Shown one piece after another: positions 2,695-28,507 of a stretch of 31,065 nucleotides of DNA. How positions within the stretch are numbered: the first letter of the stretch is position 1; every line of letters starts with the position of its first letter. The position numbers were made by a program, and so were the translations under genes. The notes under the pieces are model-generated. The model made no database searches, was not told the origin of the DNA, and saw nothing but the letters and a program-made list of their open reading frames with translations. The DNA is from Octopus sinensis (taxonomy: Eukaryota): the NCBI RefSeq assembly GCF_006345805.1, contig NW_021832453.1:1-31065 (forward strand), in the 5' to 3' direction.

Positions 2695-3612
2695 GGCTCC
2701 TTGTCAATGAATGCCATGTATGGAGACTATCTTTGACTAGGTATTTCTCCTGCAGCTGTCTTACCAGAAATATAGCATCAATAGTGCTTCTCCCTGGCAC
2801 AAACCCAAACTGCATCTCATCTAAACTAACTCACTCCCTATTTAGTTGGGCTATGTCCCTCTCCGTGGCTTTCATCACCTGGTCCAACAATTTCATACCT
2901 CTGTAATTAGTTTTGTCTAATGCATCACCTTTACCTTTGTAGCAATTGATTATGGTGCTGCAACACCAGTCATTGGGTATGACCCCTTTGCACATCACCT
3001 GCTTGACTATACATGTGACTAGACTACAGCCTACACCACCAGATATTTTAAGCATCACACCAGTGATTCCTAATGAGGCAGGAGCTTTCCCTGCTTCCAT
3101 ACCCTTAATTGCTTTATCTACCAAGGTACTGTCAATTTGAATAGCTGATCCCTCTGTTAGGTCAACATTTGGCACACTTTTTTCCATTCAGGAACCATTT
3201 ATAGTGGCATCTCCAAGTCTCTCTCTTTGCAGCATCATTAAATGCAAGTGACCCATCATCCATGCAGACACATTTCTCTCTTTTGACATCACAATTCTCT
3301 CTCACACACTGTCTTGCAATATGAAACACTTTGAGTCTCTGGTCCACACAAGAAAGAACATTGGCATCTTACCTGCTTCCCTTCTGGCTAAGTAAACCTG
3401 TCTCCTAGCTTCCCTTCTGGCGATCTGATACAGTTCCCTGCTTCCACCACACTTCCAGTCCTTCCATGCCTGTTTCTTTTTCCTAATGACCATGTCAACT
3501 ACATTGTTCCACCACCATGCCACCTTAGGTCAAGTGGGCCTTTGCATCAGCCACAGATCTGGTCAGTAGCCCGCAACAGGTTGTCCCATAGGAACCTTCA
3601 ATTGTCCTCCAG
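2695..3612 (-). mobile_element. Degraded non-LTR retrotransposon (RTE-like LINE) ORF2 fragment: post-endonuclease linker and start of RT
   Basis: Minus-strand translations give WWWNNVVDMVIRKKKQAWKDWK, KAIKGMEAGKAP, KGKGDALDKTNYRGMKLL and LDEMQFGFVPGRSTIDAIFLVRQLQEK, which are characteristic LINE ORF2/RT motifs. Contains stops and frameshifts and is truncated at both ends. Confidence 0.9.
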
Positions 3613-4704
3613 AAGTGGTGTCACACTTCTCCTGTCTCTTTTATGCAGTTGTGTATCCCTCATCTGTAGAAGTTGGTAGGCTGCATCTAGAGTCAAGGCT
3701 TTACTTCAGAAATAAGTTTGTCATCTGAAAATTTCTTCCCTTTCAAAAAAGATTTCATGGTTGGAAAGAGGTGGAAGTCAGATGGTGCGAGGTCAGGAGA
3801 GTAAGGATTTCATAGCCACAGGAGTGTGCTTCCATCTGGGCAACACGTGTTTTGTGAACTGAGTTGTTGTCTTTGAGGAAGCAGACTCCTTTGGTCAGCC
3901 CTTTGCCAGAAAATCCATCATCACTAATCTGTGCTGGTCCAAAAAGATTGAGCATCACCTTGCCTGGTCAGGGCTGGACGCGACCCTTCTTTGGAGGTGA
4001 TGAGTTATCATACTTCCATTGTTTTGACTGGACTTTAGTCTCAGGACCATAGTGATGGACCCACGCTTCATCCTGTGTGATAGGTCTGCTGAAAAAATCC
4101 TCCTCATTTTCTTGACACATTGCCAAAAGGGCCTTGGAACAATTGACCCATTCCTGCTTTTGAAAAGATGTGAGCATCTGGGGAATCCATTGTGCTGATA
4201 ACATGTACAAATGGTTGTAAATGAGTTTTTTCCCACAGATCCTAAGCTTATCTTCACTTTTTGGGTTAGTTGCCATAAAGTTCTGTGGTGATCCTCCAAA
4301 ATGGCAGCTTCCACTTTATGGATGGCATCATCATCAATGGCAGAATGTGGTTGTCCAACAGTTTCCACCAATGTCCAGCCCCATTTGAACAGGTGATGCC
4401 AGTGCTTGACTATGTTGTATGATGGTGCATCGTCACCATAAGTGCTTCTTTCATCTCATCAAAAGTCCCATTTGGTGTACGACCTTCCAAGTATAAGAAC
4501 CTGATCCCTGATCTGCATTCAACTGCCTCCATTATAACAGCTAAGTCCACTTCAGCAGCCGCAAAAGACAAACGAATCCGAGTGGAAAGCTGCAATTTAC
4601 AATGGGACATGGGGAGACAGGTATGACTATACCTGTACAAGTTCCGTTTCCTGCAATAACTGGAAGTGGGTGGGTGAGGGAACATCTTTAATGAACACCC
4701 CTCA
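3613..4704 (-). mobile_element. Decayed mariner (DD34D) DNA transposon with 5' TIR present and 3' end missing
   Basis: ATG at 4532 (MEAVECRSGIRFLYLEGRTP). Motifs: WIPQML (WVPHEL-like), TQDEAWVHHYGPETKVQSKQW, KDNNSVH and YSPDLAPSDFHLFP (~3805-3765). Minus-strand terminus TA|TGAGGGGTGTTCA at 4706-4692 resembles CGAGGGG-type mariner TIRs. Confidence 0.93.
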
Positions 4705-8899: not shown

Positions 8900-9844
8900 C
8901 AGATATACATACATATATATACACATATATATGTTTATATATACACGTATATATATATATTTATATATATATATATATATATATACATATATCTATATAT
9001 ATATATATACATATATTTATATATATACTTACCTTTGTATATATACTTACTACATATGTCTATACATATACTTAATATGAACATACACACATATATACAG
9101 CTACAGATGCATGCACATACTCACCCCTGCATACATACATACATAGATATGCTTACTGACCTACATACATACAGACACACATTCATACATTTATATACAC
9201 ACACATATATACATTGATGAGAGGGATTATATATACATTGGTTTTTCTTAGGTTTTGTTTTCTGAAACAAAGAATGTCTGTTGAAATAGAATATTTTTCA
9301 GTAGAAAACTGAGACATTTTACAAGAAAAAATTGTGAGGAATAATTTGATATTATATACAGTAACATACGGAGATATATACACACACACATACATAGATA
9401 TATGTATATGGACAGTGTGTGTGTGGTGTATTTAAGGATATTTAATTATCAGTATATCACTCTCTCCAAACCAATTAAAGGGCTCCTTTCTGATCCCTTA
9501 TGGCAGATAAAATGCTAACACAAGAAATGAAAAGAGATGCAGCCATTGTTTGGAACTTAGAGATTTAGAAAATATCAAACTTTAAAGATCTTTAGTACAC
9601 AAAGCTCAGATCAAAATAGGAGAATTCTCGTGATGTAACAGCCATACAGAGCTCTCGGTCATTGGCTCAATACACACATATATACATTCCTATAACAATA
9701 GAATCTGACTAGAAGGAGATTTGGCTGTTATTTCTATCAGGGTTAGCTACTCTAAAGCATTCTCCTTCCTTGCTTCGTTCAATGTCCGACACATTAACGA
9801 TGAAGTCATTCACTGCACAAATAACAGTCCTTTCTTCTAAATGC

Positions 9845-12938: not shown

Positions 12939-13519
12939 TAATTGATCTTTTTCTTCTTTCAATCAATGAAATATATTTTTTTAACTGATTTTGATTTTAA
13001 TATTAAACTTTGTATATAAATGGAATTGTTCTGGTGATTTCATTTCTATTTTATATCTTGAAGCAAACAAGAAGAATTGTTTAAATATTAAACAATTTGG
13101 TGACAACATATATTTTCTCTCCCAGTACAATCTACATCCTACATCAACATTTTAATGTGCAATGCATTAAATATATATATAAGTGAGAGAGAGAGAGAGA
13201 TACACACTTGTATACATACATATATACGCACACTCTTCACGTTTGTGCTAATTTCCTCCTACCATTTTATAAACTATAAAAAATGTGTCCAGGATTTCAA
13301 ATACTTTTACAAGAAGAGAAAGTTTATATTTTTTTGAACAATTTCAAAAATATTTGATGAATTCTAAAGAAAGAAAATGTAAATTATATTTAATGACAAA
13401 AAGTTTTAGATTTTATTTTGCATAGAAAATTCAAAGTTTGTAAATCAATTTTACAGAAATATAAGCTAAGAAATCAAATAGGTACGTAATTGTGTCTTTA
13501 TTTTTGTCCCACTAACATT

Positions 13520-13698
13520 GCTTGACAACCGATGTTGGTGTGTTTACATCCCTGTAACTTAAAAGTTCAGCAAAAGACACCAATAGAATAAGTACTAGGC
13601 TTACAAAGAATAAGTCCTGGGGTCAATTTGTTTGACTAAAGGCAGTGCTCCAGTATGGCCACAGTGAAATGACTGAAACAAGTACAAGAATAAAAGAA
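13520..13698 (+). mobile_element. Interspersed repeat (SINE-like) ending in GACTGAAACAAGTA(AAAGAGT)
   Basis: Collinear with the minus-strand copy at 27813-27990 (TGCTTGACAACCGATG, AATAAGTACTAGGCTTACAAAG, GGTGCTCCAG). Confidence 0.75.
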
Positions 13699-13943
13699 TA
13701 TATATATATATACATATATACACGTACACTATATAAATACACACACACATAATATATACATGTTTATGTAAAAGGGAAATAAAATGTTGAAGTTGATATT
13801 GAAAAGGAGAGAGGGAATGAGAGAGAGAGAGAGAGAGAGAAGAAAGTAAAAGAAGAGAAGGACATATGAAGGATATGAAATAGGAAAGGAAGGTTGTTAT
13901 CATTATTATTAATTACTGTTACTATTACTATTATTTGGGTGAA

Positions 13944-14256
13944 GGCGCATGGCTCAGTGGTTAGAGCGTCGAGCTTACGATCGTGAGGTTGTGAGCTCGA
14001 ATCCCGGACCGGGCTGCGTGTTGTGTTCTTGAGCAAGACACTTTATTTCACGTTGCTCCAGTTCACAGGTGCCAAGCTGTATCGGCCCCTTTGCCTTTCC
14101 CTTGGATAACACTGGTGGCGTGGAGAGGGGAGGCCGGTATGCATGGGCGACTACTGGTCTTCCATAAAACAACCTTACCCAGACTTGTGCCTCAGAGGGT
14201 AACTCTCTAGGTGCAAACCCATGGTCACTCATGACCGAAGGGGGTCTTTACCCTTT
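13944..14256 (+). mobile_element. tRNA-derived SINE with A box TGGCTCAGTGG (13950) and B box GAGCTCGAATCC (13993)
   Basis: tRNA-like head followed by a TTCTTGAGCAAGACACTTT core and a non-tRNA body. There is no complete cloverleaf. Confidence 0.85.
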
Positions 14257-14263
14257 ATTATTT

Positions 14264-14939
14264 GGGTGGTGAGCTGGCAGAATCGTTAGCATTCCGGGCA
14301 AAATGCTAGGCAGCTATTTGTTTGCTTTTACGTTCTGAGTTCAAATTTTTCCAACATCAACCTTTATCCTTTCGGGGTCAATAAAATGAGTACCTTTTGA
14401 GTTCTGGGGTCGATGTAATCAAGTTGCCTGCTCCCCAGAACTTTCTGGCCTTCTGTTAAAATTTGAAGCCATTATTATTATTATTATTATTATTACGACT
14501 CATCTGCCACTACATTCTGAGTTCAAATTCCACCAAGGTCAACTTTGCCTTTCATCCTTTTGGGGTCGATTCAATAAGTTCCAGCTACGCAATGGAGGCG
14601 ATGTAATTTACTAGTCCCCTCACCCCAAATTTCAGCCTTGTCCTATAGTAAGAAGTATTATTATTATTATTATTTTATTATTAATTATTATTACTATTAT
14701 TATTATTATTATTATTATTATAATTACTGTGACGAGCTGGCAGAATTGTGAGGATGCAAAGCAAAATGTTGAGCGGCATTTTGTCCATCTTTACATTCTG
14801 AGTTCAAATTCCACCAAGGTCAACTTAGCCTTTCATCCTTTTGGGGTCGATTCAATAACTTCCATGATGCACTGAAGCGATGTAATTTACTAGTCCCCTC
14901 ACCCCAATTTCAGGCTTGTGCCTATAGTAGAAAATTATG

Positions 14940-14982
<43 letters not shown>

Positions 14983-15533
14983 ATTAATTATTATTATATT
15001 ATTATTATTATTATAATGTGACGTGGCAGAATTGTGAGGATGCAAAGTGTGCGGCATTTTGTCCATCTTTACTTTCTGAGTTCAAATTCCATTGACTTAG
15101 CCTTTCATCCTTTTGGGATCGATAAATTAAGTACTAGTTGAGTACTGGGGTCAGTGTAATAGACTGGACCCTTCCTTCAACTGCTGGCCTTGTGCCAAAA
15201 CTTTTTTATATTATATTAAAAAAACTAAAAGAAATCATTGCTGTTGTTATTGTGTTTTTGTTGCTGCTGCTAATATTATTATTATTGATGTGTTATTGTT
15301 ATACATTGATGAGAAGCGGAATTGTTACAAAATGGCAGACAAAATACTTTGCATCATTTCTTCCAAGTTTACATTTTGAGTTCAAATTCCACCAAGGTTG
15401 ATTTTGCCCCTCGTCCTTTTGGGATTGATAAAATAAGAACCAGTTAGGGGCTGGGGGGGTGACATAATCAATTAACCCCCCACACCCAAAATTTCAGGTC
15501 TTATGCCTATAGTAGAAAGGATTATTATTATCT
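14264..15533 (+). mobile_element. Head-to-tail array of ~5 copies of one tRNA-SINE family separated by (TTA)n tails
   Basis: TTCTGAGTTCAAATT...CATCCTTT(C/T)GGG recurs at ~14335, 14515, 14795, 15075 and 15375. Confidence 0.88.
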
Positions 15534-15555
15534 TCAAAATATTACCAAAAAAAGT

Positions 15556-15759
15556 TGGGGGCATGGCTGTATGGTTAAGAAACTCACTTCAGAACCTTGT
15601 GGTTTCAGGTTCAGTCCCACTCTGCAGCACCTTAAAGAATTAACTTCTTCTAATGTTCCAGGTCGACTCAAGCCTTGTGAGTGGGTTTCGTACCTGGAAC
15701 TGATAAAGCCTATGGTATATACATGTGTGTGTATATTCATGTATGCATATCTACATTTG

Positions 15760-15806
<47 letters not shown>

Positions 15807-16005
15807 TGTGTGTGTGTGCATATGTCTGCTCATGTCTCCTTGTCTTGACATCTGCTGCGAATTATAAACAAATGTCACGTCAAACAAACAGAGTCGTTTG
15901 TTTGCAGTGTTCCACCAGAAAACATATCCAACCATTGTGCTGTTCATGTTGGAAGAACTTGGGGAAATATTCTCTTGCTTGAAGCCAGGTGAGGATTGGT
16001 GACTC
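15556..16005 (+). mobile_element. tRNA-derived SINE with internal (TG)n tract
   Basis: GGCTGTATGGTTAAG A box, GGTTCAGTCCC B box and AAGCCTTGTGAGTGG body. Homologous to the minus-strand copy at 28034-28195. Confidence 0.75.
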
Positions 16006-16137
16006 TCATCAAGTGTAGTCATAGACTCGACTGAGTGGGACTCATGAGAACCTGGCAAGAAACAAAACAAAATTATTAGAAGGAAAATACAGAAAAGAAA
16101 ATACACCACCTGATGTATTATAAAGGTTTTGATATCC

Positions 16138-16265
16138 ATTTTCCCTAACTGGCATGGGTAGGACAGTTGACGAGGAAGTAGTGAACCAGAGGACATTGCT
16201 GAGCTCCAATGAAAGATTTGGCAAGATTTGGCAAGATTTCTACAGCTGGATGATCTTCTTAACAC
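16138..16265 (-). mobile_element. Degenerate copy of the 8250-8560 repeat family
   Basis: CCATTTTCC...GCATGGGTAGGACAGTT...GATTTGGCAAGATTTCTACAGCTGGATG. Confidence 0.6.
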
Positions 16266-16744
16266 CAGATGCACACATACACGTGTGTGTGTGTGTTTAT
16301 GCATGCATAAGAGTATATGAATGAATAAACATGGGTTTACTTATGTTTGATTGCACATCTGATTTTGTATGCTAGCATGGGTTAGGTGAATATATTATTG
16401 TAGCCTTGTTTTACAGACAGACAGCCTTCCTATTGCTCACCCAAAACCATTTTGCACGAACAAAAGTTCTTATTTCCCATGTCTTCCAAGGTGGGGGTGA
16501 TTGGTTGACAGATGTTTCTGCTTGGAGCAACTTAAAAGAGATTGCAAACATAAACAAATGCACAGACACCTATGCGCACACACACTCAGCTCGAGTTCAC
16601 TGCTTCCTGTAGCAGAAACAGCTGGAAGCTAATGAAGGTGTCTACGTAACTCTTGTTCTTTTGTCGTTCATTGATTCATATCTATAAACATACATAGACA
16701 CAAATATTTATACACGGGTATGTGAAGGTATATATATGTAAAAG

Positions 16745-17102
16745 AACCCACTACACTCATGGAGTGGTTGGCGTTAGGAAGGGCATCCAGCCGTAGAAAC
16801 TTTGCCAGATCAGACTGGGCATGGTGCAGCCTTCTGGCTTCCCAGACCCCAGTGAACCGTCCAACCCATGCTAGCATGGAAAGCGGATGGTAAATGATGA
16901 TATATACATATATATATATATATATATTATATATGTATATATCATCATTTACCATCCGCTTTCCATGCTAGCATGGGTTGGACGGTTCAACTGGGGTCTG
17001 GGAAGCCAGAAGGCTGCACCATGCCCAGTCTGATCTGGCAAAGTTTCTACGGCTGGATGCCCTTCCTAACGCCAACCACTCCATGAGTGTGTGTAGTGGG
17101 TT
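16745..17102. repeat. Near-perfect 358-bp palindrome made of two tail-to-tail SINE-like 3' halves
   Basis: 16745-~16914 is the reverse complement of ~16928-17102, apart from a 1-bp indel and a 4-bp (CA) indel. The spacer is a short AT tract. Confidence 0.93.
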
Positions 17103-17519
17103 TTTGCGTGCATCCAGCTGTAGAAAGAAAACCAGAAAATGTAACTTCAGGCAAGATATTCTTTGAACCATCCAACCAATTCCAGCATGGAAAGTGGGGG
17201 TAAAATGATGATCATCATACATACATACAGACATATGGATGTATAAATATACATATGTGCATCCGTGTGTATATATTATACATGTATAAATATACATATG
17301 TGCATCCTTGTGTATATATTATACACATTCATTCATATATATGTATGCATGTGTATATAAATACATCTACGATTAGATTAAAGTCTAATTATTATGAGGG
17401 GTTTTGTAGGTTTTTCTTCCCCAAAATAAACCAAGTAGAATGGCACAAATGAAACATAAACATTCATTCCAATTTAATTTTACAATAGAAATATTTGCAA
17501 TTATCTGCTTTTCTCTTTA

Positions 17520-18197
17520 TAAACTTTGCTGCCAACAACAACAGCAATAACAACAACATAGCCTTATCCAGCTGTTCCCCAAAAATATGTTGTTGTTTAG
17601 TCCATGTATATTCAAAGAGCTGACATCCTGAACAAGGTCTCTTTTATTTTTCATTCCTCCTGGGGTCAATAGAGTAACAGTCATTATTTCATAGACCAAG
17701 GAGGCGGTGGAGGATCATTCTGATGATGATGGGTCACCAGAATGTCATTAAACACCCCCACCAATATTTCCTAATCCACCTCATTAAACCCCCAATACTT
17801 CATAATAAACTACACCAAGTTATAACTCCTCACCTAACACAAAACAAAACACACTTCACCTGCCAAACCCCTTTTTCATACAAACACATCTTTCTCATTG
17901 CTACCCAAACATTGTCCCTTATATTAAAGATAATTAAGATGAACCTACCTTTCATTAATTGGGCTTATTCATTAACCAATCTTTATTATCTCAATCAGCA
18001 ACAAATAATAACGATCCTCTCAACATGCTGTCTATCAGTGTGATTATATGAAAGCCCATCTTTGGATAAGCTTTCCGAGTTAATCAATGTGTGTGTATGA
18101 TAATTGTGTGGATTATATTGAAATGTCGAGAGATTTACAGCATTTGTCAGGTTAAGAACAGTTTCATCTCCAGCTTTATTGGTATCTGTGAATCCAG
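17520..18197 (+). CDS. Candidate coding exon, heavily frameshifted; 5' boundary uncertain
   Basis: Non-repetitive, with overlapping open segments ending ...YIE[N]VERFTAFVRLRTVSSPALLVSVNP at a CAG|GTAAAT donor (18198). It joins in phase 1 to the acceptor at 18409/18410, giving P|EIIVGSDF. Confidence 0.4.
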
Positions 18198-18409
18198 GTA
18201 AATATGATGGAAACCAAGCCAACCATGACTGTCACATCATTTCCAGTGCATATAATTATTAATAATACTTATATTCCTGATTTGTAGGGACGGGTATTTC
18301 ATTATGCAACCATAAATTCCTGTAAAATATATTAAATCGTTTTAGAAGTCAACACCACATTCTACTTTGTTAGCAGTGTTTTTCACATTATTCTATTGAT
18401 ATTCCATAG

Positions 18410-18751
18410 AAATTATAGTTGGCTCTGATTTTTTGCTAAAACCTTTCCTATCGAGATGTCAGATGTAAACAAACAATGAGATAAACAATGAGAACAAACA
18501 ACAGATTTTTTCTCTTTGATCTCATTGTTTGTTTCCGTCTGACATTTCGATATGAAATGTTGTAGCAGGAAATCAGTCCTGGCTATAATTTCTACCGATA
18601 ATATCTGTAGAAATAACCTCAACAAAATATTTATATTCCTTCTTACTACAACACTTTTCACCATCACTTATATTCAGTCAATAAAGATAATGGTGTATTT
18701 ATATCTTCAAGTTTTATTTCTAATGATTATTCCATTGAAAACAGTTTAAAT
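18410..18751 (+). CDS. Candidate coding exon, frameshifted; 3' boundary uncertain
   Basis: TTCCATAG acceptor in phase with the 18197 donor. Segments read EIIVGSDF / FDLIVCFRLTFRYEM / SYYNTFHHHLYSVNKDNGVFISSSFISNDYSIENSLN. The donor is weak. Confidence 0.3.
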
Positions 18752-18895
18752 GTTTAACTTCACTGTCAAATAAACAATTTGTTTAATATATTTAATGAAA
18801 TGTGTGTTTTCCTTGAAATTCTTTGAATGAATCAAGTAAATATTATTTTATCAAAAGCTTTTCACAAAACTAATAAAGTTTTCATTTTATTTCAG

Positions 18896-21800
18896 CTTTC
18901 ATGTAAAAATTAGTGAATTTTGAAGAGATAAATTGTATTCCAAAAGAAGAAAAACAAAATCCACAGAAAAGAATATATTTAACAGAAAAAGATAATAATT
19001 CTATATTCATAAAATGGAGAAGATTAATGAAGAAAACAAAATGTTGGCTCTCATTCCTGCCACAGTCTGTGATACAACAGCAATTTATAAGGAAACTACA
19101 CCAATTATTACCCAAATATTATTACACACAAAACACAAAGAAAACAGAAGAACAGGAAAGAAAAGACACAAAGAAATCTAAAGAACAGGAAAAGTCCATG
19201 TTACCAAGTTTCCTTCATATTGTGACATGTTACCGAACACTAATCAAAACAGACCACATCAATACGTTTATAGATTATGTAAAGGATAAATGTAATCACA
19301 TGGACTCTCTGGGTTTAAATGGATCTCGAATTTTACGTAATATCAAACGTAAAATGCCAAGATTTCTGGAAATTGCAGAACAAAATAATGATTTTGTTCA
19401 CCAAAACCTTGATTGGTTTCAACAAAGACTCTTTGACATTTATGTCACCTGTAACCCATACAACCACAAGACCATTGAACCACCAAAAGTAACCACAAAA
19501 TTTCGTCCTCTTCGGCCAGTTGTGACCAGAGAAGTAGAGATTGAGGAATCTGGTGAAGACTTAAGCAACCCAATATCCAATATTGTCGTCATGCAAGGGG
19601 GTATTGTAACATATTCCCGCCACTGTATGACAATATGTTGTATAACAAGAGACGGCAACAGAAACGATGTTCGTTGCTCATCTTCTGTCACTGATTTTAC
19701 AAGAATCAGTGAAGACACAGTCCTCGCCACCCTGCCCTTCCGAAAAATGATTCTTATTATCAACCCTTTAAGTTTGAGAATCACAAGAATTCAGCTAGGA
19801 TTAATCTTGGTTTCTTATTTGGAACATTCTACGCTTATAGGTGTAGAAATGTTTGGTCAGACCATATACGTCATTGACTGGGAAGAGAATAGAATAAAAT
19901 ACGAATTCATAACGAAAGAAATCCCTTCAGATATTGCTGTAGGAGCACAAAATAAACTCTTAGTATCCTTTTCCAATATTAACAGGGTTACCTGTTACAA
20001 TGTGGATGGCCAGCATTATTTGAGGTGGATACCAATTCCCTGGACATTCCAAGCCACATCTCTGTGTACCAAAACCATTTTTATGTCCTTCAGGGACATA
20101 TTATTTATCGGATATCAGGTACAGGTGCTGTGACAACAAGAGGAATTGGCATGAAATGCCGCCATATTTCTGTTGGCAGAGAAAACATTTTTGTACCGAT
20201 TATTTTGATGTCCTTCATATCATTGGAACAAATGAAGACTTTTGGCCCAGGCAGTCACATAACCCCAGCTATGGACCCCAACATTGAACAGCTATATTTA
20301 TATTGAGGATTGCTACAACATTACAAATATTCTACCTATGTCTACATCTTCTATATTAATAATTTACAAAAACAAGAAAGCTAAATTATTCACTGATAAC
20401 GGGGAAATAATTAACCAAAATAATTCAGTTTTCCTTGGGCTTCCTTCTTCTGTTGTAGAATAAACGCAAACAGATTCCTGGTATTTTATCCTGAAATGAA
20501 AGGGTTTCAGTATATCACCTGTCCTGAAAGAAAAGGCCTTTAATAAAGGTGCAAACTGGTTACATGAAAATCTGTCATATTGTATCAAATAAGTGTTAGC
20601 TGTGACCACCATGAAAACAAAAGCGAGGTCCATATCCTCTTGATCCACAAAGATAAAGTTGACATTGCAGAAAGAATTTCTCTGGGACATCATAATGTCA
20701 GCATTGCTGCAACTCCAATTAATTTTGTAGTCGTAGATGGAAACGAAAAAAAAATGGTATTTTATTCCACATGTGGTGAAGAACTTTTTCAAAAATACCT
20801 TCCATTCTATGGCTACCCTCATCACATCTACTCTGATAATGTTTATTCTATGTCCTCTTCAGGAGACACTCTATTCTCAGATGTTACGATCTATATGGAC
20901 AAATGAAATGGCAGTGGGAACTGCCTTCCCTGTTCACCCTCACATTGCTGTTTTCCAAGGAACTCTTTATGTCCCGGACACTCAACTCAACAGGGTTCTT
21001 CTTTACAAGTATCAAGACCGGTCGTCTGGCTGTCTTTTACCCATTAAAAATCCTTACATCAGAAATCTAAATCTACGACTCAAAGAAAAGGAGAATGACC
21101 AAAAACTTGTCATTGGCGAAATATGTAATCTGTCCAATGGACAGTTGGTGGTGTCCGACATCAACCATGATTGCTTGTTGTACATTTCTGAGGAAGGAGA
21201 CATTGTGTCCAGATTATCTCTGCCGTCTACAGCCACAGATATATGTCGATGGGATTCTAATCATATAGGGGTCACATTACCCCTACAGAAACAATTAAGG
21301 GTCATCGGAAACCTATCAAAGACAGTGAGAAGTGTAAAATTAAGGCAGCCTTATGTACGGGTGTGTAAGATGGGTGAATGTGAAATTGTTTGTTATTGTG
21401 ATAAACCATCACATTTAGACATTTTAGCCATCAATTATTATAATCAAGTTGAAGTAATTAAGACAATTAATATCCCTGTGTTTGTGAAATCATTATCAGT
21501 AGACAAGGAAACAGAAAAGCTATTAATTGTTACTAGGGAAAAAGCTTTTCAGTACAACACTAGAATAGGTGGTGGTGGTCATCGTCGTCATCGTCTTCGG
21601 TGTAAAACTAGATATGGTTATGCTAGTAGTATTAAGATGGTCCCCAGTGTTTTATGTCCCAAGTGAAACGTCCCCTCAGTCTCCAAGGTGGATCTATTGA
21701 CCCAACGTCTGTTTATCTGATAGACAGAAGCCGTATGTTTGCCATAAACGATCAGAATTTGTTGGTTAATGATCTCGTTACTAATAATCAACTTAATTAT

Positions 21801-24422
21801 TATATCGACCTGGTGGATGTATTTTCCAGACACATTTCTCTCAGTGAAATGTTGTCTTCCACTTTATATCTACAGGACCTGACAGTTTCTGATAAAGGCA
21901 GACGTATTCCTCTCCCTAAACATTTGGGAGACAAAAGACCAGCGAAGATTAAACGTTTGGTTCTTACTGAAAATAATCTGATTGCAGGATGTGACAGGAA
22001 GAATGGATACATTAAGATATTCACATTGGATGGTCACCTTATGGATTCAATCAAAGTGAAAGTTTATAGAGATATTAAAATGTGTCGATGGCAGTCAAAC
22101 ACACTGGTCATTACGACTGGGGATCGTTCTAATAAACACCAATTGTGGACATTAAAAGTGGAATTTCCATTGTCGTTGGTAATTTACAAAACGAGAAATA
22201 ATTATAATTGTGTGGCTTCTTTATCAAACAATCAACTGGTTTTGAGTGAAAAGAGAGATGGAAGACATTTGCATTTTGTTGATATTAATGAAATACATTC
22301 GAGTGTGAAGGAAATAAAAAAAATAGACATACCTGAACCATTAATAGAGAGAAGCAGAGATGGAAAGTATTCTGATATAATCCGGGATATTAAAGTTACT
22401 GATGAAGATGTCATCATTGTCTTCAACGAAAGATTCATCATTTTCTTCAACAGTGGTGGTCAATATTTACATTCAGTCAGACACTACATGGAGTATTATG
22501 TTGGTGATGATGACAGGATGACAATTGATGACAGTTTTTTGTACATTTATGGTGAGTGGGAGAAATGTTTTGTTTCATCTGGATATCGAAATATTTTGTG
22601 TTTGACCCAGAATGGGGAATACAAGAGAATATTTTTAAATAAAAGAATTTATAAAGATAGAGTAGATTTCTCCAGTATAGACTGTAAAGGACCAAGGTTT
22701 GTTGGAAGCCCCAGGAGGAATGAATGTATGTTGAAGGGTTGTTTATGGTGAATCGAGACAGCTTCCCGGTTGCTCGTTTACAACAGACGAATGTCCTGTT
22801 CAGAGTAAAAGATTTTGATGTCTCTGAGGAAGGAAAGACAGTTGTGTGTGAAAAAGCCAATAATGGAAATGTTAAAATATTCGATGAAGACGGCCAGTTG
22901 CTATGTCACAGAAATGTTGCAAGTTTAGTTGGTGGTGTGTGTTTTACACAAGAATCACACATAATGGCCACGGTTCCTAAAAGGAAAGAAATATTTCAAC
23001 TGAATGGAGAAGATTTGCAGACATCTCAAGTTTGGTCGAGTCTCATCCCTTATGGTGTAATATGGAGAAAAGTGGCGGGTATTTACTGGTGTGTACATAA
23101 TGAATTGATTGAATGTCATTGCATAAAGATTGATGGGGACCAAGTGAACATTCTGGAATCTGTGTCGTCATTAAATCTTGATTCTGGTCTTCGTTCCCTT
23201 CCATTACATCTGAAACGAACAAGGAAATATTCAGTAATGAATTAATTAATAAATTGGAATACAGAGGAGGAGATGGAGATGGAGGAGGAAGAAGAAGAGG
23301 TAAATCAGGTGAAATAATTGGTAAAGGTAGATTAAAGGTGAGATGTGGTAATTACATAGCGGAGATTAATAATTCAGGAATTGATGAAATATCAGTGAGG
23401 AGACTTCCATATAGGACAGCAATGGTCCCTTTTTCCATTCCTGCATTCGAGGAACCTGTTGATTATGATTTGAGGGACATTAGGGACCTGAACAGTAAAC
23501 TAATTAAGTTAGATGAGAATGTGAGTGTGTTGATGTTTCGAGAAAGTGTCACATTAATCAGAACAACAACAACAACAGTGGACATACTTCAACATGAACA
23601 ACAACACGACCACCACTGGACATATGTCGGTGGACAGAGGAATGTTTCATTGTCGCCTTTGGAGAGAAATGAGGGTCTTCAACAGGGATCTCTCGTCGTT
23701 TAAAAACCATCAGAACTGAGAAATACTACAACAGGATTTTAAATACAACGACAATCAACTCGTGTGTGGTGGTCATTATATTAGAGACATAACTCAAGAA
23801 GAGAGAGACGAGAAATACGAAAGAATATGGGAAAACAACAAGGATTACTATTTTGCAAAGACCCTGACATCTTTGACCCTTATTATGTGGATGTGTTGAT
23901 ATTGAAGATGGGAAATGTAAAGATGAAGTGTGTCGTGGGAAGATGGGGATATGGAAGGTTTGAGGGAGATGAAGGGGTGGATGATGTGGGAGTCACATCT
24001 TTTGGTGATGTTGTTGTTGTGAGGAGGGAGATGAGGAGGAGAAGGGGTCTGGAGATTGGGAAGTTTTGTGTTTTGTGGAATGGTTCAGGGAAAAGTCTTT
24101 GGTGAGGAGGATAAGAATAAAAGGAATATTTATTGGTCAGAAATATTATAATCCAAGACCTCGTCTGACCATAATTGGTGAATGTGTTTATATAACAGAT
24201 ACAATAAACAATATTTACGAAATACCTCGACAGATTGAAGAGGAAACATCTGAAGTTATTAAAATCTGGGGATTAAAAGATAATCCAAAATATTTACTCC
24301 TCAGATGGGATGATAATGAAGTCTTTGCAGTTCTTGGTTTGGATGTTTCAGACAATTCTTTGATGGTTTTTGGAATTATTCTTGGACGTCAATCTTTTGC
24401 TTTCTTTTATTTTGACAAATAA
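18896..24422 (+). CDS. Giant terminal exon (~1840 codons after repair) of an uncharacterised protein: helical linker plus six tandem NHL/TRIM-like beta-propeller modules. Frameshifted in this sequence.
   Basis: TTTTATTTCAG acceptor at 18895. Seven long overlapping ORFs (18913-24422) join into one reading when single bases are restored in homopolymers. Blade motifs such as LVIGEICNLSNGQLVVSDINHDCLLYISEEG and DICRWDSNHIGVTLP recur. The stop TAA (24420-24422) lies inside AATAAA (24418-24423). Confidence 0.8.
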
Positions 24423-24801
24423 ATATTTTCAGAAATATTAAACTTCAATCTTCTTCTTCTTCTTATTGTTGTTGTTGTAAATGCTTCGCCCGGGAATCGA
24501 ACCTGCATCGCATACATTGCATTCTACACACTTATTGTCGTAACATTCCTCAACCCTTCTCTTTGTGTGTGTGTGTATATTTATGTACAGTATATGTACA
24601 TGTGTTTATATATATATACACACATATTTAAGAGGATGTATGTATAGAAATAAGGCTATAAGTATGTATTTTTGTGGTGTATATGTGTTGTATATATATA
24701 TATAATATTATATATATATATATATGCTTGCATGTATGTATAGGAATGTCTGGTCCGAAAGCAGAGACTTTCATAATCATTGATTCTCCATTAAAAGGCA
24801 A

Positions 24802-25095
24802 CGACCACCGCCGCCGTCTCCGCCGTCGTCGTCTCCGCCGTCGTCGTCTCCGCCGTCGCCGTCGTCGTCGTTTCCGCCGTCGTCGTTTCCGCCGTCGTCT
24901 CCGCCGCCGTCGTCGTCGTCATCATCATCATCATCATTATCGTCATCATCATCACCATCATCATCGTCATCATCATCATCGTCATCACCATCATCGTCAT
25001 CATCGCCATCATCATCGTCATCATCATCATCATCGCCATCATCATCGTCATCATCATCATCATCGTCGTCATCATCACCATCATCATCATCATCG

Positions 25096-25186
<91 letters not shown>

Positions 25187-25518
25187 AGTCATCATCGTCA
25201 TCATCATCATCATCATCATCGTCGTCATCATCATCGCCATCATCGTCATCATCATCATCATCATCATCATCGTCATCATCATCTTCTTCATCATCATCAT
25301 CATCGTCATCATCATCGCCATCATCATCGTCATCATCATCATCATCATCGTCGTCGTCATCATCATCACCATCGTCGTCATCATCGCCATCATCATCGTC
25401 ATCATCATCATCGTCGTCGTCATCATCACCATCATCATCACCATCGTCGTCATCATCATCATCATCGTCGTCATCATCACCATCATCATCGTCATCATCA
25501 TCATCGTCGTCGTCATCA
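24802..25518. repeat. Cryptic trinucleotide array (CGC/CGT grading into CAT with CGT/CAC/CGC variants)
   Basis: Uninterrupted triplet periodicity for ~240 units. It produces the poly-Arg/His (+) and poly-Met/Thr (-) ORFs. Confidence 0.97.
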
Positions 25519-25680
25519 GCGTTGTGTGTGCGTGTGTGCAGTCTGCATCTGACAGTTTTTAACGTTTAATAAGAATAGATTGTTGTTGTTGTTCTTGCAG
25601 TGACATTCCAACTGCACACACGCACAAACATTGCCTTTCGTCCTCGTAGGGTTGTTCTTGTTGTTGTTGCTGTTGGGGGT

Positions 25681-26035
25681 TCATAAAAAAAGAGAAGGAC
25701 ACTTTAAGAAGCATTCAGTAAAAGCTTTCCCATAGCTGGTCATTTTTCACGCTAGAAATAGAAACCACTTTATTTTTCATATAAATTTTGAAGGACAGAT
25801 AAGAAGCATTCATAAATAAAATTGACCTGTATATGGTCTCATTTCATGCTAGAAAGAGCCATCTAAACCTTCACATTTTTGTTTCATCACAAATAAAAAT
25901 CGATGGACAATTTCCAAAGCATCCATGTCAAATATTGTCCTATAGATGGCCTAACATATGCTAGAAATAACAGCCAAATACTCTGAAATTGTATCGTTTT
26001 TCATAAAAAAAGTGAAGGACACTTTAAGAAGCAAC
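25681..26035. repeat. Degenerate ~100-115 bp tandem repeat (~3.3 units)
   Basis: CATAAA...GAAGGACACTTTAAGAAGCA at 25681 and 26001, with weaker copies at ~25778 and ~25888. The first three units contain GCTAGAAA (25751, 25848, 25960). Confidence 0.65.
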
Positions 26036-27058
26036 TCTAAAAATATTGTCCTGCGGCGGTTTAAGTGTAAAAATTATAAAAGTATGCATCTATGAGTTTT
26101 ATGTGTTTAAAAAACATAGCAAAGACATGTGTGTATATGTAGATATATACATGTGTATAAAGGTATTTTTTATAAAAATGGTATTTTTGAATGAATTTTG
26201 TAGAAATAACTTTCAAACGATGCAGATTACGATTAAAAAGAAATTTGTTGGCAAAATGTTTTGTAAGGGTTCGAGGAAAAAGTGTGTGATTTAAGGGAGA
26301 TTTGGCTGTTGTTTCTAGCACACCACCCTCCTTGTCTTCTTTTTTTTTTCTCATTTTTTCCCTCAGAAACACATTTATGTTACAAAAAAATAAAAAATAT
26401 TTTTAAATCTCTGATTATTTTTAGCCCCACTTCCTGGCCCCCGATTCTTTCTCTTTATATAATTGTAAAATATTGGAGAGCCTGAGAAGATTCTTGCTGG
26501 GATTTATCCACAGGGATTTAAATAAGAGCTTTGTAAAAGAGGATTCTTTTGAGAGCATCCTTTTCTGTTAGAAAATGAAAGTGGAAGTTTCATTAAAATA
26601 TCCATTTTCCTGGAAGTTATGAGGAAACAAAGTCGATGGGGTGTTCATCTGTAGTTATGCCACAGGATGTATATTATATATATATATAACTGTAGAAATG
26701 TGGTGTGTATATATATATATTATATAATTATGGTGGTTTGTGTATACATTTATTCATGTATATGTACAAGTTTAAAAAAGAATATCAAAAGATGTTGGAA
26801 TATTTGAGGTATTGGATAAATTCCGACTCAGGATTGCCAATACATTTATATAGGAATATAAATATACATCATTATTATACGTAGCCTTCTTGCACACACT
26901 AAGCATACCCCGTAGAAAAGACGACGGGTAAATCCATCTGTGACAACCCATGCTTAAGGGTGTCTGGTGATATTTCGGGTCTGGTATCACACAAACCGCC
27001 CAGTCTGGAGTCTCTCTCTAAACTTCTTCTGCCGCTTCCCGTTCAATTGTTTCTATTT

Positions 27059-27256
27059 GTTGCCTAGCAACGCTAATTTGAATGACAAAAAACGTGGAGA
27101 AAAAGGCGGGAAATTTAGACAAAACTTTGTCTAAATTATTTATTTAAAATCAAAGAGACATTGTCAGCATTTTTATGAATTAAATAATGTTAAATGACAT
27201 TAAGGTCTCACAATTAAGTCATTAATTAGGAATTATAATTAATTTGGACGCGAAAA
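27059..27256. promoter_or_regulatory. Putative promoter: RFX X-box, CHR-like site and two E2F-type sites
   Basis: GTTGCCTAGCAAC at 27059-27071, TTTGAA at 27077-27082, GGCGGGAAA at 27105-27113 and CGCGAAAA at 27249-27256, in a locally CpG-retaining non-repeat patch. Confidence 0.5.
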
Positions 27257-27544
27257 GAAAGGAAAACTAACGGATGTGTGTATATGTATGTATTTATGTA
27301 TGTACATAAGCAGGTAAATATTTATATATGTAAGTGTGTATGATATTTACATACGTCTATAGAGAGGAGAAGGGGGAGAGAGAGGGTGGGTATTACACAT
27401 GTATACACATAAGACGAATGATGTCTGGGTGTGGTCGGTGTGTCTGTGTGTGTGTGTATACACGCCTGTTTATGTTTGTGCGTGTGTGTTATTTATGTGT
27501 GATGTTGTTTGTGGTGTGTGTGTGTATCCGGGAACGTCACTTTC

Positions 27545-27570
27545 TGCCTCTCTCTCTCTATATCTGACTG

Positions 27571-27601
<31 letters not shown>

Positions 27602-27757
27602 CTATCTATATATATCTATATTATATATATATATATTATATATATATTATATATATATATATATTATATATGTCTGTTTGACTCTCTCCCTCTCCCTATC
27701 TATCTACCATCTCTCTCTCTCTATCTGTCTATCTTTTTATGAATATATCTATTTATG

Positions 27758-27812
<55 letters not shown>
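27545..27812. repeat. (CT)n/(CTAT)n/(TA)n microsatellite block
   Basis: Direct repeat runs. Confidence 0.93.
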
Positions 27813-27814
<2 letters not shown>

Positions 27815-28005
27815 CCTTTTACTCTTTTACTTGTTTCAGTCATTTGGCTGCGGCCAAGCTGGAGCACCGCCTTTAATCGAGCAACTCGATCTCGGGACTT
27901 TTTCCTTTGTAAGCCTAGTACTTATTCTACGGACCGTTTTGCCGACCCGCTAAGTAACGGGGACGTAAACATCGGTTTGTCAAGCAATGCTAGGGGGACA
28001 CACAG
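27813..28005 (-). mobile_element. SINE-like repeat (family of 13520-13698)
   Basis: TTTTACTTGTTTCAGTCATT...GTAAGCCTAGTACTTATTCT...CATCGGTTTGTCAAGCAATG. Confidence 0.78.
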
Positions 28006-28033
28006 ACACACTCATATATATATATAAATATAT

Positions 28034-28195
28034 ACGACGGGCTTCTTTCAGTTCCATCAAACAAATCCACTCACAGGGCTTTGGTCGGCCCGAGGCAATA
28101 GTGAAGACACTTGCCCAAGATGCCACGCATGGGACTTGTACCCGGAACCTGTGGTTGGTAAACAAGCTACTTACCACACAGCCACTCCTGCGCCT
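28034..28195 (-). mobile_element. tRNA-derived SINE head (family of 15556-16005)
   Basis: The reverse complement reads GGCGCAGGAGTGGCTGTGTGGTAAGTAGC...GGTTCCGGGTACAAGTCCC...CTTGGGCAAGTGTCTT. Confidence 0.8.
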
Positions 28196-28333
28196 ACACA
28201 CATACACACACACACACACACATACACACATACACACATACATATATATATATTAATTAAGGGTAGAAATTGATATTTATCAATTAAGACCAGTGGTCTA
28301 GCATATTAAAAAAGAATACAAGATTAAAATATT

Positions 28334-28507
28334 TATATATACCAATTGAGGACTGAACACAAAAGTGGACAGTCAACATGCTAGATATAGACGTCAAATC
28401 GCCATTCTCCACAAAAGATTATGTTCTCAGATCAAACTCACCAAGTTTTTGTACGAAACATAATAAACTGTCCACTTTTCGTGTTCAGTCCTCAATTGGT
28501 ATATATA
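28334..28507. mobile_element. Foldback/MITE-like element with ~40-bp inverted arms
   Basis: TATATATACCAATTGAGGACTGAACAC-AAAAGTGGACAGT (28334-28373) matches the reverse complement of 28467-28507 with one indel. TA context on both sides. Confidence 0.8.

What the first reader, a model, noticed from the sequence alone, without database searches (positions are those of the whole stretch)
18896..24422. Hidden giant exon encoding six tandem NHL/TRIM-like beta-propellers
Seen: the fragmented ORFs stitch into one ~1840-aa reading. The same second-blade motif occurs six times at 690-860 bp spacing: TDFTRISEDTVLATLP (19690), SSVCRINANRFLVFYP (~20446), TDICRWDSNHIGVTLP (21235), IKMCRWQSNTLVITTG (22074), GGVCFTQESHIMATVP (22931) and LDICRWTEECFIVAFG (23616). 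Two of these (modules 2 and 6) are invisible in the ORF track. Known: molluscan B-box/TRIM-like proteins usually end in a single such propeller. Inference: this is a lineage-specific multivalent propeller array in one intronless exon, possibly a pattern-recognition or scaffold protein of an uncharacterised cephalopod family.
Basis: partly seen in the sequence, partly recalled or inferred. Interest (0 to 1): 0.8.

Follow-up and report, generated by a model that had tools for sequence, protein, structure and literature searches.

The report
Octopus six-propeller giant gene copy
The region is one frameshift-riddled copy of an uncharacterised, octopus-only, intronless gene of about 5.4 kb whose roughly 1,800-residue protein is a chain of six related modules, at least one predicted to fold like the NHL beta-propeller of TRIM-NHL proteins.

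Summary
Five of the six motifs are exact at the stated coordinates. The sixth (20445) straddles a frameshift. The pieces stitch into one reading from an ATG at 19014 to the stop at 24420-24422.

Paralogues in Octopus vulgaris and O. sinensis carry the same reading in far longer ORFs (1011+758 aa; 1377 aa). Intact intronless members of 1,625-1,925 aa exist in O. vulgaris, O. sinensis, O. bimaculoides and Argonauta hians. All are annotated "uncharacterized".

The six modules are homologous in register (hhalign probability 84-97% for eight pairs; reversed controls at most 4.3%). An AlphaFold2 model of the window's own module 4 gives six four-stranded blades. Its best PDB matches are NHL domains: TRIM2 (TM 0.68), Brat, Thin, TRIM71.

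Pfam NHL stays below threshold, and no Pfam family, RING and B-box included, reached threshold. "NHL-like" is therefore supported and "TRIM-like" is not.

The window copy needs about 25 frame corrections, mostly private 1-bp deletions. These are equally frequent in the non-coding flanks, and no nonsense substitution is present. I favour assembly errors in a multi-copy ~15-kb duplication; a very young pseudogene is not excluded.

Function is unknown. I infer an intracellular multivalent binding scaffold.

The parts
19014..24422 (+). Whole coding region of one copy of the octopod six-module gene. It runs from the ATG (MEKINEENKML) to the TAA stop and is interrupted by about 25 frameshifting indels.
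   Evidence: The start matches intact paralogue P0012. The C-terminus ...SFAFFYFDK* matches P0010, P0012 and L006.
19014..19545 (+). N-terminal non-repeat region of about 175 aa. It is poorly conserved between subfamilies and has one 1-bp insertion at 19122.
   Evidence: Pfam finds nothing here. No signal-peptide-like or transmembrane-like stretch was found.
19546..20300 (+). Module 1 (motif at 19690-19737). Bounds are approximate, set 48 aa before the motif. Private 1-bp deletions at 20015, 20194 and 20262.
   Evidence: (module 1 vs 2: probability 93.6%).
20301..21090 (+). Module 2 (motif at 20445-20492). It is broken by deletions at 20449, 20528 (4 bp), 20596, 20611, 20845 and 20925, which is why the ORF list does not show it.
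   Evidence: It is intact in P0003, P0005 and L006. hhalign of module 2 vs 3 and vs 4 gives 91-95%.
21091..21929 (+). Module 3 (motif at 21235-21282). A low-complexity Gly/Ser/His-rich stretch at about 21560-21660 sits between blade-like units 4 and 5 and varies in length among copies.
21930..22786 (+). Module 4 (motif at 22074-22121). It lies almost wholly inside the 371-aa open frame 21636-22748 and is cut in its last blade by a 7-bp deletion at 22724.
   Evidence: AlphaFold2 gives six four-stranded blades, with pLDDT 70-93 for residues 90-310. The top Foldseek hits are NHL domains of TRIM2, Thin, Brat and TRIM71.
22787..23471 (+). Module 5 (motif at 22931-22978). It is the shortest module and carries a disordered Gly/Arg-rich insert. 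There is a frameshift at 23193.
   Evidence: (module 4 vs 5: 93%). Its first blade matches TRIM71 and Brat NHL repeats in the profile search.
23472..24419 (+). Module 6 and the C-terminus (motif at 23616-23663). It has at least 8 private frameshifts, so the ORF list does not show it.
   Evidence: (module 4 vs 6: 96.6%; 3 vs 6: 95.7%).
13168..28464 (.). Duplication unit of about 15.3 kb (gene plus 5.8 kb upstream and 4 kb downstream). It is shared at 88-97% identity with other loci of O. vulgaris chromosome OX597841.1 and with O. sinensis contigs.
   Evidence: The left end, 13168, is the same against L002 and L006. The right ends fall at 28253-28464 against L002, L003, L005 and L006.

Best explanation
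Window 19014-24422 (+) is one copy of an octopod-restricted, intronless gene.

The protein, about 1,800 aa, has a non-repeat N-terminal region of about 175 aa. No signal-peptide-like or transmembrane-like stretch was found. Six tandem, mutually homologous modules of 215-280 aa follow. Each module is built from blade-like units of about 40 aa. Module 4 is predicted to close into a six-bladed NHL-type beta-propeller.

This copy belongs to a young sub-cluster spread by duplications of about 15 kb. In the window its frame is broken about 25 times, mainly by private single-base deletions. I judge most of these to be consensus errors of a long-read assembly in a multi-copy region (about 60%) rather than real decay (about 40%).

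Mechanism (inferred, not shown): the protein is a soluble intracellular platform with no catalytic or E3 domain. Each propeller would offer a face for binding a protein or RNA ligand, as the single NHL propellers of Brat, Lin41 and TRIM2 do. Six in a row would give multivalent or combinatorial binding. Weak constraint and recent copy-number growth fit a fast-evolving recognition role.
For: Reading frame:
- Paralogues hold the same reading in ORFs of 900+844 aa (L001), 1011+758 aa (L003), 976+511 aa (L005) and 1377 aa (L006).
- The majority consensus of four copies gives ORFs of 928+850+137 aa.

Intact family members:
- Intact intronless members are L007 (5025 bp), L008 (5043 bp) and L010 (5493 bp).
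- Full-length proteins of 1,625-1,925 aa come from three Octopus species and Argonauta hians. They are collinear over their whole length.
- The orthologue pair P0019/P0030 has dS 0.099, dN 0.039 and omega 0.39.

Repeat and fold:
- Modules match in register, against reversed controls.
- The AlphaFold2 model of the window's own module 4 has pTM 0.68 and six blades.
- Its top Foldseek hits are NHL domains: TRIM2 7qrv (E 6.5e-10, TM 0.68 by target length), then Brat, Thin, TRIM3, TRIM71 and Mei-P26.
- In the family-profile search of PDB sequences, 10 of the 12 best hits are TRIM-NHL domains; the best is TRIM71, E 2.9e-4.
- The modules 5-6 model is all-beta, with 10-11 four-stranded sheets. It matches tandem-propeller proteins.

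Localisation: no transmembrane-like or signal-peptide-like stretch in a hydropathy scan.

Error reading:
- Private 1-bp deletions versus private substitutions are 25:50 in the window. They are 2:91 (L002), 3:81 (L006) and 12:87 (L005) in sister copies, with Fisher p 3.5e-8, 5e-7 and 1e-3.
- The rate is alike in non-coding flanks (4.1 per kb) and coding sequence (2.8 per kb).
- There are 0 in-frame stop substitutions.
Against: - No sequence-family model reaches threshold. The best Pfam NHL score is 18.5 bits against a cut-off of 20 (P0025). In the window the hit has E 0.041.
- The PDB profile hits cover only one repeat of about 28 aa each.
- Both models have mean pLDDT about 65. The two-module model has low TM-scores (0.16-0.31).
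- Modules 1, 2, 3, 5 and 6 are called propellers by homology or low-confidence modelling only. Module pairs 1-5 and 1-6 are at control level.
- Omega among the young copies is 0.48-0.92.
- The O. vulgaris copies L001-L003 each carry one to several disabling lesions. L002 also has two in-frame stops. Real decay in this sub-cluster is therefore common.
- With only 36 private coding substitutions, the absence of nonsense changes is not significant on its own.
- No expression data and no ligand data were available.
Confidence: 0.8

Rival explanations
1. The window copy is a genuine, recently dead pseudogene. The roughly 25 frameshifts are real mutations in a redundant duplicate undergoing birth-and-death turnover.
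For: - Every young copy examined has at least one disabling lesion (L001, L002, L003, L005).
- L002 has two in-frame stops.
- P0012 is intact but lacks about 190 aa spanning modules 1-2.
- Omega among the young copies is 0.5-0.9.
- One window deletion, at 20449, is shared with L006.
Against: - The window has only 36 private coding substitutions against 15-20 private 1-bp deletions. That ratio is 4- to 20-fold above its sister copies.
- The same excess is seen in the non-coding flanks, where real mutation should treat all copies alike.
- Deletions outnumber insertions about 6:1, and nearly all are 1 bp.
- There is no nonsense substitution.
Confidence: 0.38
2. The six sequence modules do not form six separate propellers. 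Some blades are shared or lost (module 5 is only about 215 aa), giving fewer, larger or open beta assemblies.
For: - The modules 5-6 model shows 10-11 sheets rather than 12, with low TM-scores to any solved tandem propeller.
- Module 5 is short and carries a disordered insert.
- Module 3 has a low-complexity insert between blade-like units 4 and 5.
Against: - Module 4 on its own models as a compact six-blade unit matching whole NHL domains (aligned about 300 columns, target about 278 residues).
- Modules align in register over up to 178 columns.
Confidence: 0.25
3. The roughly 15-kb multi-copy unit is a mobile element, and the giant ORF is its cargo or its own protein.
For: - The unit has reproducible ends (13168 and about 28253-28464). 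Its copies lie dispersed over about 3 Mb in both orientations on OX597841.1.
- An inverted pair of 77%-identical repeats lies near each end, at 13505-13761 and 27755-28000.
Against: - No transposase, integrase or reverse-transcriptase domain is found in the unit.
- The inverted repeats lie 340-460 bp inside the ends. They match an interspersed repeat present many times in other loci.
- Older family members are single-copy orthologues with conserved upstream sequence between species.
Confidence: 0.05

Closest known systems
NHL domains of TRIM-NHL proteins (TRIM2, TRIM3, TRIM32/Thin, TRIM71/Lin41, Brat, Mei-P26)
   Same: The fold is a six-bladed beta-propeller built from units of about 43 aa. 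These domains are the top Foldseek matches for the window's module 4 (TM 0.62-0.68 normalised to the target). They also make up 10 of the 12 best hits of the family profile against PDB sequences.
   Different: Those proteins have one propeller after RING, B-box and coiled-coil regions (with or without filamin). Here there are six modules in a row, and no Pfam family, RING and B-box included, reached threshold. Sequence identity is 11-14%. Pfam NHL stays below threshold.
Uncharacterised octopod proteins XP_014776406.1 (O. bimaculoides), CAI9743080.1 and CAI9728090.1 (O. vulgaris), XP_029641499.1 (O. sinensis), GAB1597371.1 (Argonauta hians)
   Same: They belong to the same family. They are collinear over the full length, share the same six motifs and, in the closest members, the same C-terminus, and are intronless.
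   Different: Those are intact ORFs, whereas the window copy is frameshifted. None has a name, a domain annotation or a publication that I could find.
Tandem YWTD six-bladed propellers of LRP5/6 and LDL-receptor relatives (from my own knowledge)
   Same: Several six-bladed propellers of a related superfamily lie in one polypeptide, giving multivalent ligand binding.
   Different: Those are extracellular. Their propellers are separated by EGF modules, and they have a signal peptide and a membrane anchor. None of these features is seen here.
Multi-propeller WD40 proteins (DDB1, Utp21, axonemal WD proteins)
   Same: These are the top Foldseek hits for the two-module model, as tandem propellers.
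   Different: They are seven-bladed WD40 proteins. TM-scores are only 0.16-0.31, and there is no sequence relationship.

Membership tests
NHL repeat (Pfam PF01436) | Sequence scores above the Pfam gathering threshold (20 bits) | tested here: not met
   Window module 1: E 0.041, 14.4 bits. The best family member, P0025, scores 18.5 bits with E 0.002. Other members score nothing.
NHL repeat (Pfam PF01436) | Six-bladed beta-propeller fold superposable on solved NHL domains | tested here: met
   Tested for module 4 only. The AlphaFold2 model has pTM 0.68 and pLDDT 70-93 over residues 90-310. The top Foldseek hits are TRIM2, Thin, Brat, TRIM3, TRIM71 and Mei-P26, with E down to 6.5e-10 and TM 0.62-0.68 by target length.
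NHL repeat (Pfam PF01436) | Profile-level sequence similarity to solved NHL domains | tested here: inconclusive
   TRIM71 gives E 2.9e-4. TRIM2, TRIM3, Brat and Thin follow. Each match covers only one repeat of about 28 aa, the first blade of module 4 or of module 5.
TRIM (tripartite motif) proteins | N-terminal RING finger | tested here: not met
   No Pfam family reached threshold on the window's N-terminal ORF (E up to 1) or on five full-length members (E up to 10); RING is not among the sub-threshold hits listed.
TRIM (tripartite motif) proteins | B-box zinc finger | tested here: not met
   No B-box hit appears in the same Pfam scans. No exon upstream of the ATG is needed: intact members are single-exon from their own ATG.
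TRIM (tripartite motif) proteins | Coiled coil before the C-terminal domain | not tested
   The N-terminal region of about 175 aa was not modelled, and no coiled-coil predictor was run.
Octopod six-module protein family (unnamed; e.g. XP_014776406.1) | Collinear similarity over the N-terminal region, six modules and the C-terminus | tested here: met
   The window projection aligns end to end with the paralogues. phmmer and profile searches recover only this family. Family alignment.
Octopod six-module protein family (unnamed; e.g. XP_014776406.1) | Single uninterrupted intronless ORF of about 5 kb | tested here: not met
   The window copy has about 25 frameshifts. The feature is met in L007, L008 and L010. 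Whether the window's breaks are real cannot be tested without reads.

The most novel reading that the evidence does not exclude
Octopods invented, and O. vulgaris and O. sinensis recently amplified, a family of intracellular proteins made of six NHL-type propellers. The family evolves by birth-and-death and diversifying selection as a multivalent sensor or restriction factor for foreign RNA or protein. This would be an invertebrate analogue of the fast-evolving vertebrate TRIM arms-race genes, but built without any E3 module.
Probability: 0.12. Interest if true: 0.7.

Novelty: new variant of a known kind. Interest (0 to 1): 0.5.

Why it matters
Octopus genomes are known for a few large lineage-specific gene expansions (from my own knowledge). 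This family adds an unannotated one.

- It is a 5-kb intronless gene family seen only in octopods.
- Pfam does not recognise it.
- It uses a familiar fold, the NHL propeller, in an architecture I have not seen described: six modules in a row with no partner domain.
- It gives a concrete target for structural work on multivalent propeller arrays, and for expression and ligand studies in cephalopods.
- The case also shows how assembly indels in multi-copy regions can hide a long ORF from gene callers. The existing annotations of the young copies are fragments of 262-791 aa.

Tried and rejected
- DNA self-comparison of the region found no module-to-module similarity. BLASTP among the window's own ORF fragments gave one weak hit. 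The repeat only becomes significant with family profiles.
- Pfam scans of window fragments, of fragmentary paralogues and of full-length members gave nothing above threshold.
- phmmer of P0010 against PDB sequences gave nothing.
- A global MAFFT alignment of partial paralogues (A1) was too messy to use and was replaced by A2 and A3.
- I considered using the absence of nonsense substitutions as proof of intactness. I dropped it as a stand-alone argument, because only 36 private coding substitutions exist.
- I considered terminal inverted repeats for a mobile-element reading. The pair found is an interspersed repeat lying inside the unit ends.
- A literature search for an octopus NHL or propeller family found nothing relevant.
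- Transposon-like ORFs elsewhere in the window (2831-3187 and 3955-4371, minus strand) were not confirmed by Pfam.
Full report
**1. The observation**

- 19690 and 21235 in frame 1
- 22074 and 23616 in frame 3
- 22931 in frame 2

The sixth reads FFCCRINANRFLVFYP at 20445 in frame 3.

The plus strand between 18907 and 24419 is covered by a chain of overlapping open segments in alternating frames. Nothing comparable lies on the minus strand. The reading begins at the ATG at 19014 (MEKINEENKML), which is the start of the intact paralogue P0012. It ends at the stop at 24420-24422.

**2. Relatives**

A search with the 371-aa open frame (21636-22748) found only "uncharacterized" Octopus vulgaris and O. 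sinensis proteins of 262-623 aa.

I fetched their loci. The window is collinear with several other loci at 88-97% identity over about 15.3 kb, roughly window 13168-28464:

| Locus | Source | Position or contig |
|---|---|---|
| L001 | O. vulgaris chromosome OX597841.1 | 6.04 Mb |
| L002 | O. vulgaris chromosome OX597841.1 | 8.70 Mb, reversed |
| L003 | O. vulgaris chromosome OX597841.1 | 8.93 Mb |
| L005 | O. sinensis | VCDQ01005947.1 |
| L006 | O. sinensis | VCDQ01005935.1 |

Those copies hold the same reading in much longer ORFs: 900+844 aa (L001), 1011+758 aa (L003), 976+511 aa (L005), and 1377 aa in L006. The L006 ORF runs from the module-2 motif to the shared C-terminus ...SFAFFYFDK. The majority consensus of four copies gives ORFs of 928, 850 and 137 aa, broken only at two low-complexity linkers.

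An exhaustive phmmer search of 1.84 billion representatives with P0010 found 20 proteins. Every one I looked up is from an octopod. They include full-length predictions of 1,625-1,925 aa from O. vulgaris, O. sinensis, O. bimaculoides and Argonauta hians. A profile search added more Octopus members and one intact 1687-aa ORF from a public read-set assembly, and nothing outside the group.

Three members I checked are single uninterrupted exons: 5025, 5043 and 5493 bp. The O. vulgaris / O. bimaculoides orthologue pair has dS 0.099, dN 0.039 and omega 0.39. The family is therefore real, protein-coding and under moderate constraint. I found no paper on it.

**3. Repeat architecture**

In P0016 the six motifs sit at residues 216, 470, 733, 1014, 1289 and 1504.

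I cut the family alignment 48 residues before each motif and compared the module profiles with hhalign. The matches are in register. Pairs 1-2, 2-3, 2-4, 2-6, 3-4, 3-6, 4-5 and 4-6 give probability 84-97% and E 1e-5 to 5e-10. Pairs 1-3, 1-4 and 2-5 give 56-66%; pairs 3-5 and 5-6 give about 38%. Pairs 1-5 and 1-6 are at background. Reversed-profile controls peak at 4.3%.

The roughly 260-aa repeat is therefore genuine. It is old enough that no DNA similarity remains and almost no pairwise protein similarity.

**4. Fold**

Pfam gives nothing above threshold. The best NHL score is 18.5 bits against a cut-off of 20. Other sub-threshold hints are all propeller families.

A family profile searched against PDB sequences puts TRIM71, TRIM2, TRIM3 and Brat NHL domains in 10 of its 12 best places; Thin is 14th. 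The best E is 2.9e-4. Each match covers only the first blade of module 4 or of module 5.

AlphaFold2 on the window's own 371-aa frame, with a 16-sequence family alignment, gave pTM 0.68. pLDDT is 70-93 across residues 90-310. The model has six four-stranded sheets, the last truncated where the window's frame breaks at 22724. Foldseek ranks NHL domains first: TRIM2 7qrv (E 6.5e-10, TM 0.68 by target length), then Thin, Brat, TRIM3, Lin41/TRIM71 and Mei-P26.

A model of P0010 (end of module 4, then modules 5 and 6) is all-beta with 10-11 sheets, at mean pLDDT 64. It matches tandem-propeller proteins only loosely, with TM 0.16-0.31.

- Shown: module 4 is NHL-propeller-like.
- Inferred by homology: modules 1-3 and 6.
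- Uncertain: whether modules 5 and 6 each close into a ring.

No Pfam family, RING and B-box included, reached threshold on the N-terminal ORF or on five full-length members. A hydropathy scan shows no convincing membrane span or signal peptide. The TRIM label therefore does not apply beyond the propeller fold.

**5. State of the window copy**

Against five paralogues the window carries about 20 private 1-bp deletions, a few private 2-, 4- and 7-bp deletions, and three private 1-bp insertions. More than half shorten runs of 2-3 identical bases.

Counted strictly as singletons in the six-copy alignment, the window's coding region has 15 private 1-bp deletions.

| Copy | Private 1-bp deletions (coding + two flanks) | Private substitutions |
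|---|---|---|
| Window | 25 | 50 |
| L002 | 2 | 91 |
| L006 | 3 | 81 |
| L005 | 12 | 87 |

Fisher p for the window against each copy is 3.5e-8 (L002), 5e-7 (L006) and 1e-3 (L005).

The rate is the same in the flanks (4.1 per kb) as in coding sequence (2.8 per kb). In the flanks all copies should mutate alike, so the excess is most simply a property of how this stretch was assembled. L005, from the O. sinensis assembly, shows a milder version. I do not know which assembly the window comes from.

Projected onto the consensus frame, the window has no in-frame stop. With only 36 private coding substitutions, that is weak evidence alone.

Against the error reading, every young copy I examined has some lesion. 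L002 also has two in-frame stops, and omega among the young copies is 0.48-0.92. I put assembly error at about 60% and a true young pseudogene at about 40%. Only reads can decide.

**6. How it probably works (inference)**

The protein has no catalytic, E3, membrane or secretion feature, so it looks like a soluble intracellular array of binding modules.

From established work on Brat, Lin41/TRIM71 and TRIM2, single NHL propellers bind RNA or protein partners on one face. Six in tandem would allow multivalent or combinatorial binding.

Moderate-to-weak constraint and recent copy-number growth by ~15-kb duplications are typical of recognition genes under changing pressure. They are equally compatible with drift of redundant copies.

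**7. Verdict**

The TRIM affinity, the count of closed propellers, the function and the integrity of this particular copy remain open.

The fold is known, but the architecture and the taxon-restricted family are new variants of it. Interest is moderate.

Noticed in passing
window 24811-25518: A GC-rich minisatellite (15- and 39-bp units, 24811-24917) is followed by a (TCA)n microsatellite of about 200 copies. It lies 400 bp downstream of the stop codon. Its length varies, but it is present at the same place in the paralogous loci.
   Followed up: partly
window 18391-18612: Adjacent inverted repeat with arms of about 110 bp at 78% identity, about 400 bp upstream of the start codon. It could be a MITE-like insertion or a hairpin. 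It was not examined further.
   Followed up: no
window 13505-13761 and 27755-28000: An inverted pair of a 250-bp interspersed repeat (77% identical), with a partial third copy at 1768-1877. The same element occurs many times in L001. It is probably SINE-like and does not form the termini of the duplication unit.
   Followed up: partly
window 2831-3187 (-) and 3955-4371 (-): Two ORFs that look by eye like fragments of a retroelement polyprotein and of a transposase. Pfam gave no hit at E <= 0.01.
   Followed up: partly
L005 1-1002 and 17447-17995: The O. sinensis paralogous contig carries two other features. One is a reverse-transcriptase fragment (RVT_1, E 1.6e-12). The other, just past the duplicated unit, is a C2H2 zinc-finger ORF (zf-H2C2_2, E 4.9e-44).
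   Followed up: no
L001 11475-11542; L003 about 9395-9426 (window 21910-21937): The two closely related O. vulgaris copies each have an independent frameshift within 30 bp of each other, in the module 3/4 linker: +1 in L001 and -2 in L003. The window reads straight through here.
   Followed up: no
P0012 (O. vulgaris CAI9743080.1), about residue 350: This otherwise intact young paralogue has an in-frame loss of about 190 aa that fuses module 1 to module 2. The array can therefore lose part of two modules and keep an open frame.
   Followed up: no
window 19014-19376 versus L001 8457-8875 and L003: The first 120 codons or so exist in two divergent versions among otherwise 89-97% identical copies: MEKINEENKML... 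in the window, L002, L005 and L006, and MEDQTENTLRKL... in L001 and L003. BLASTN does not align them.
   Followed up: partly
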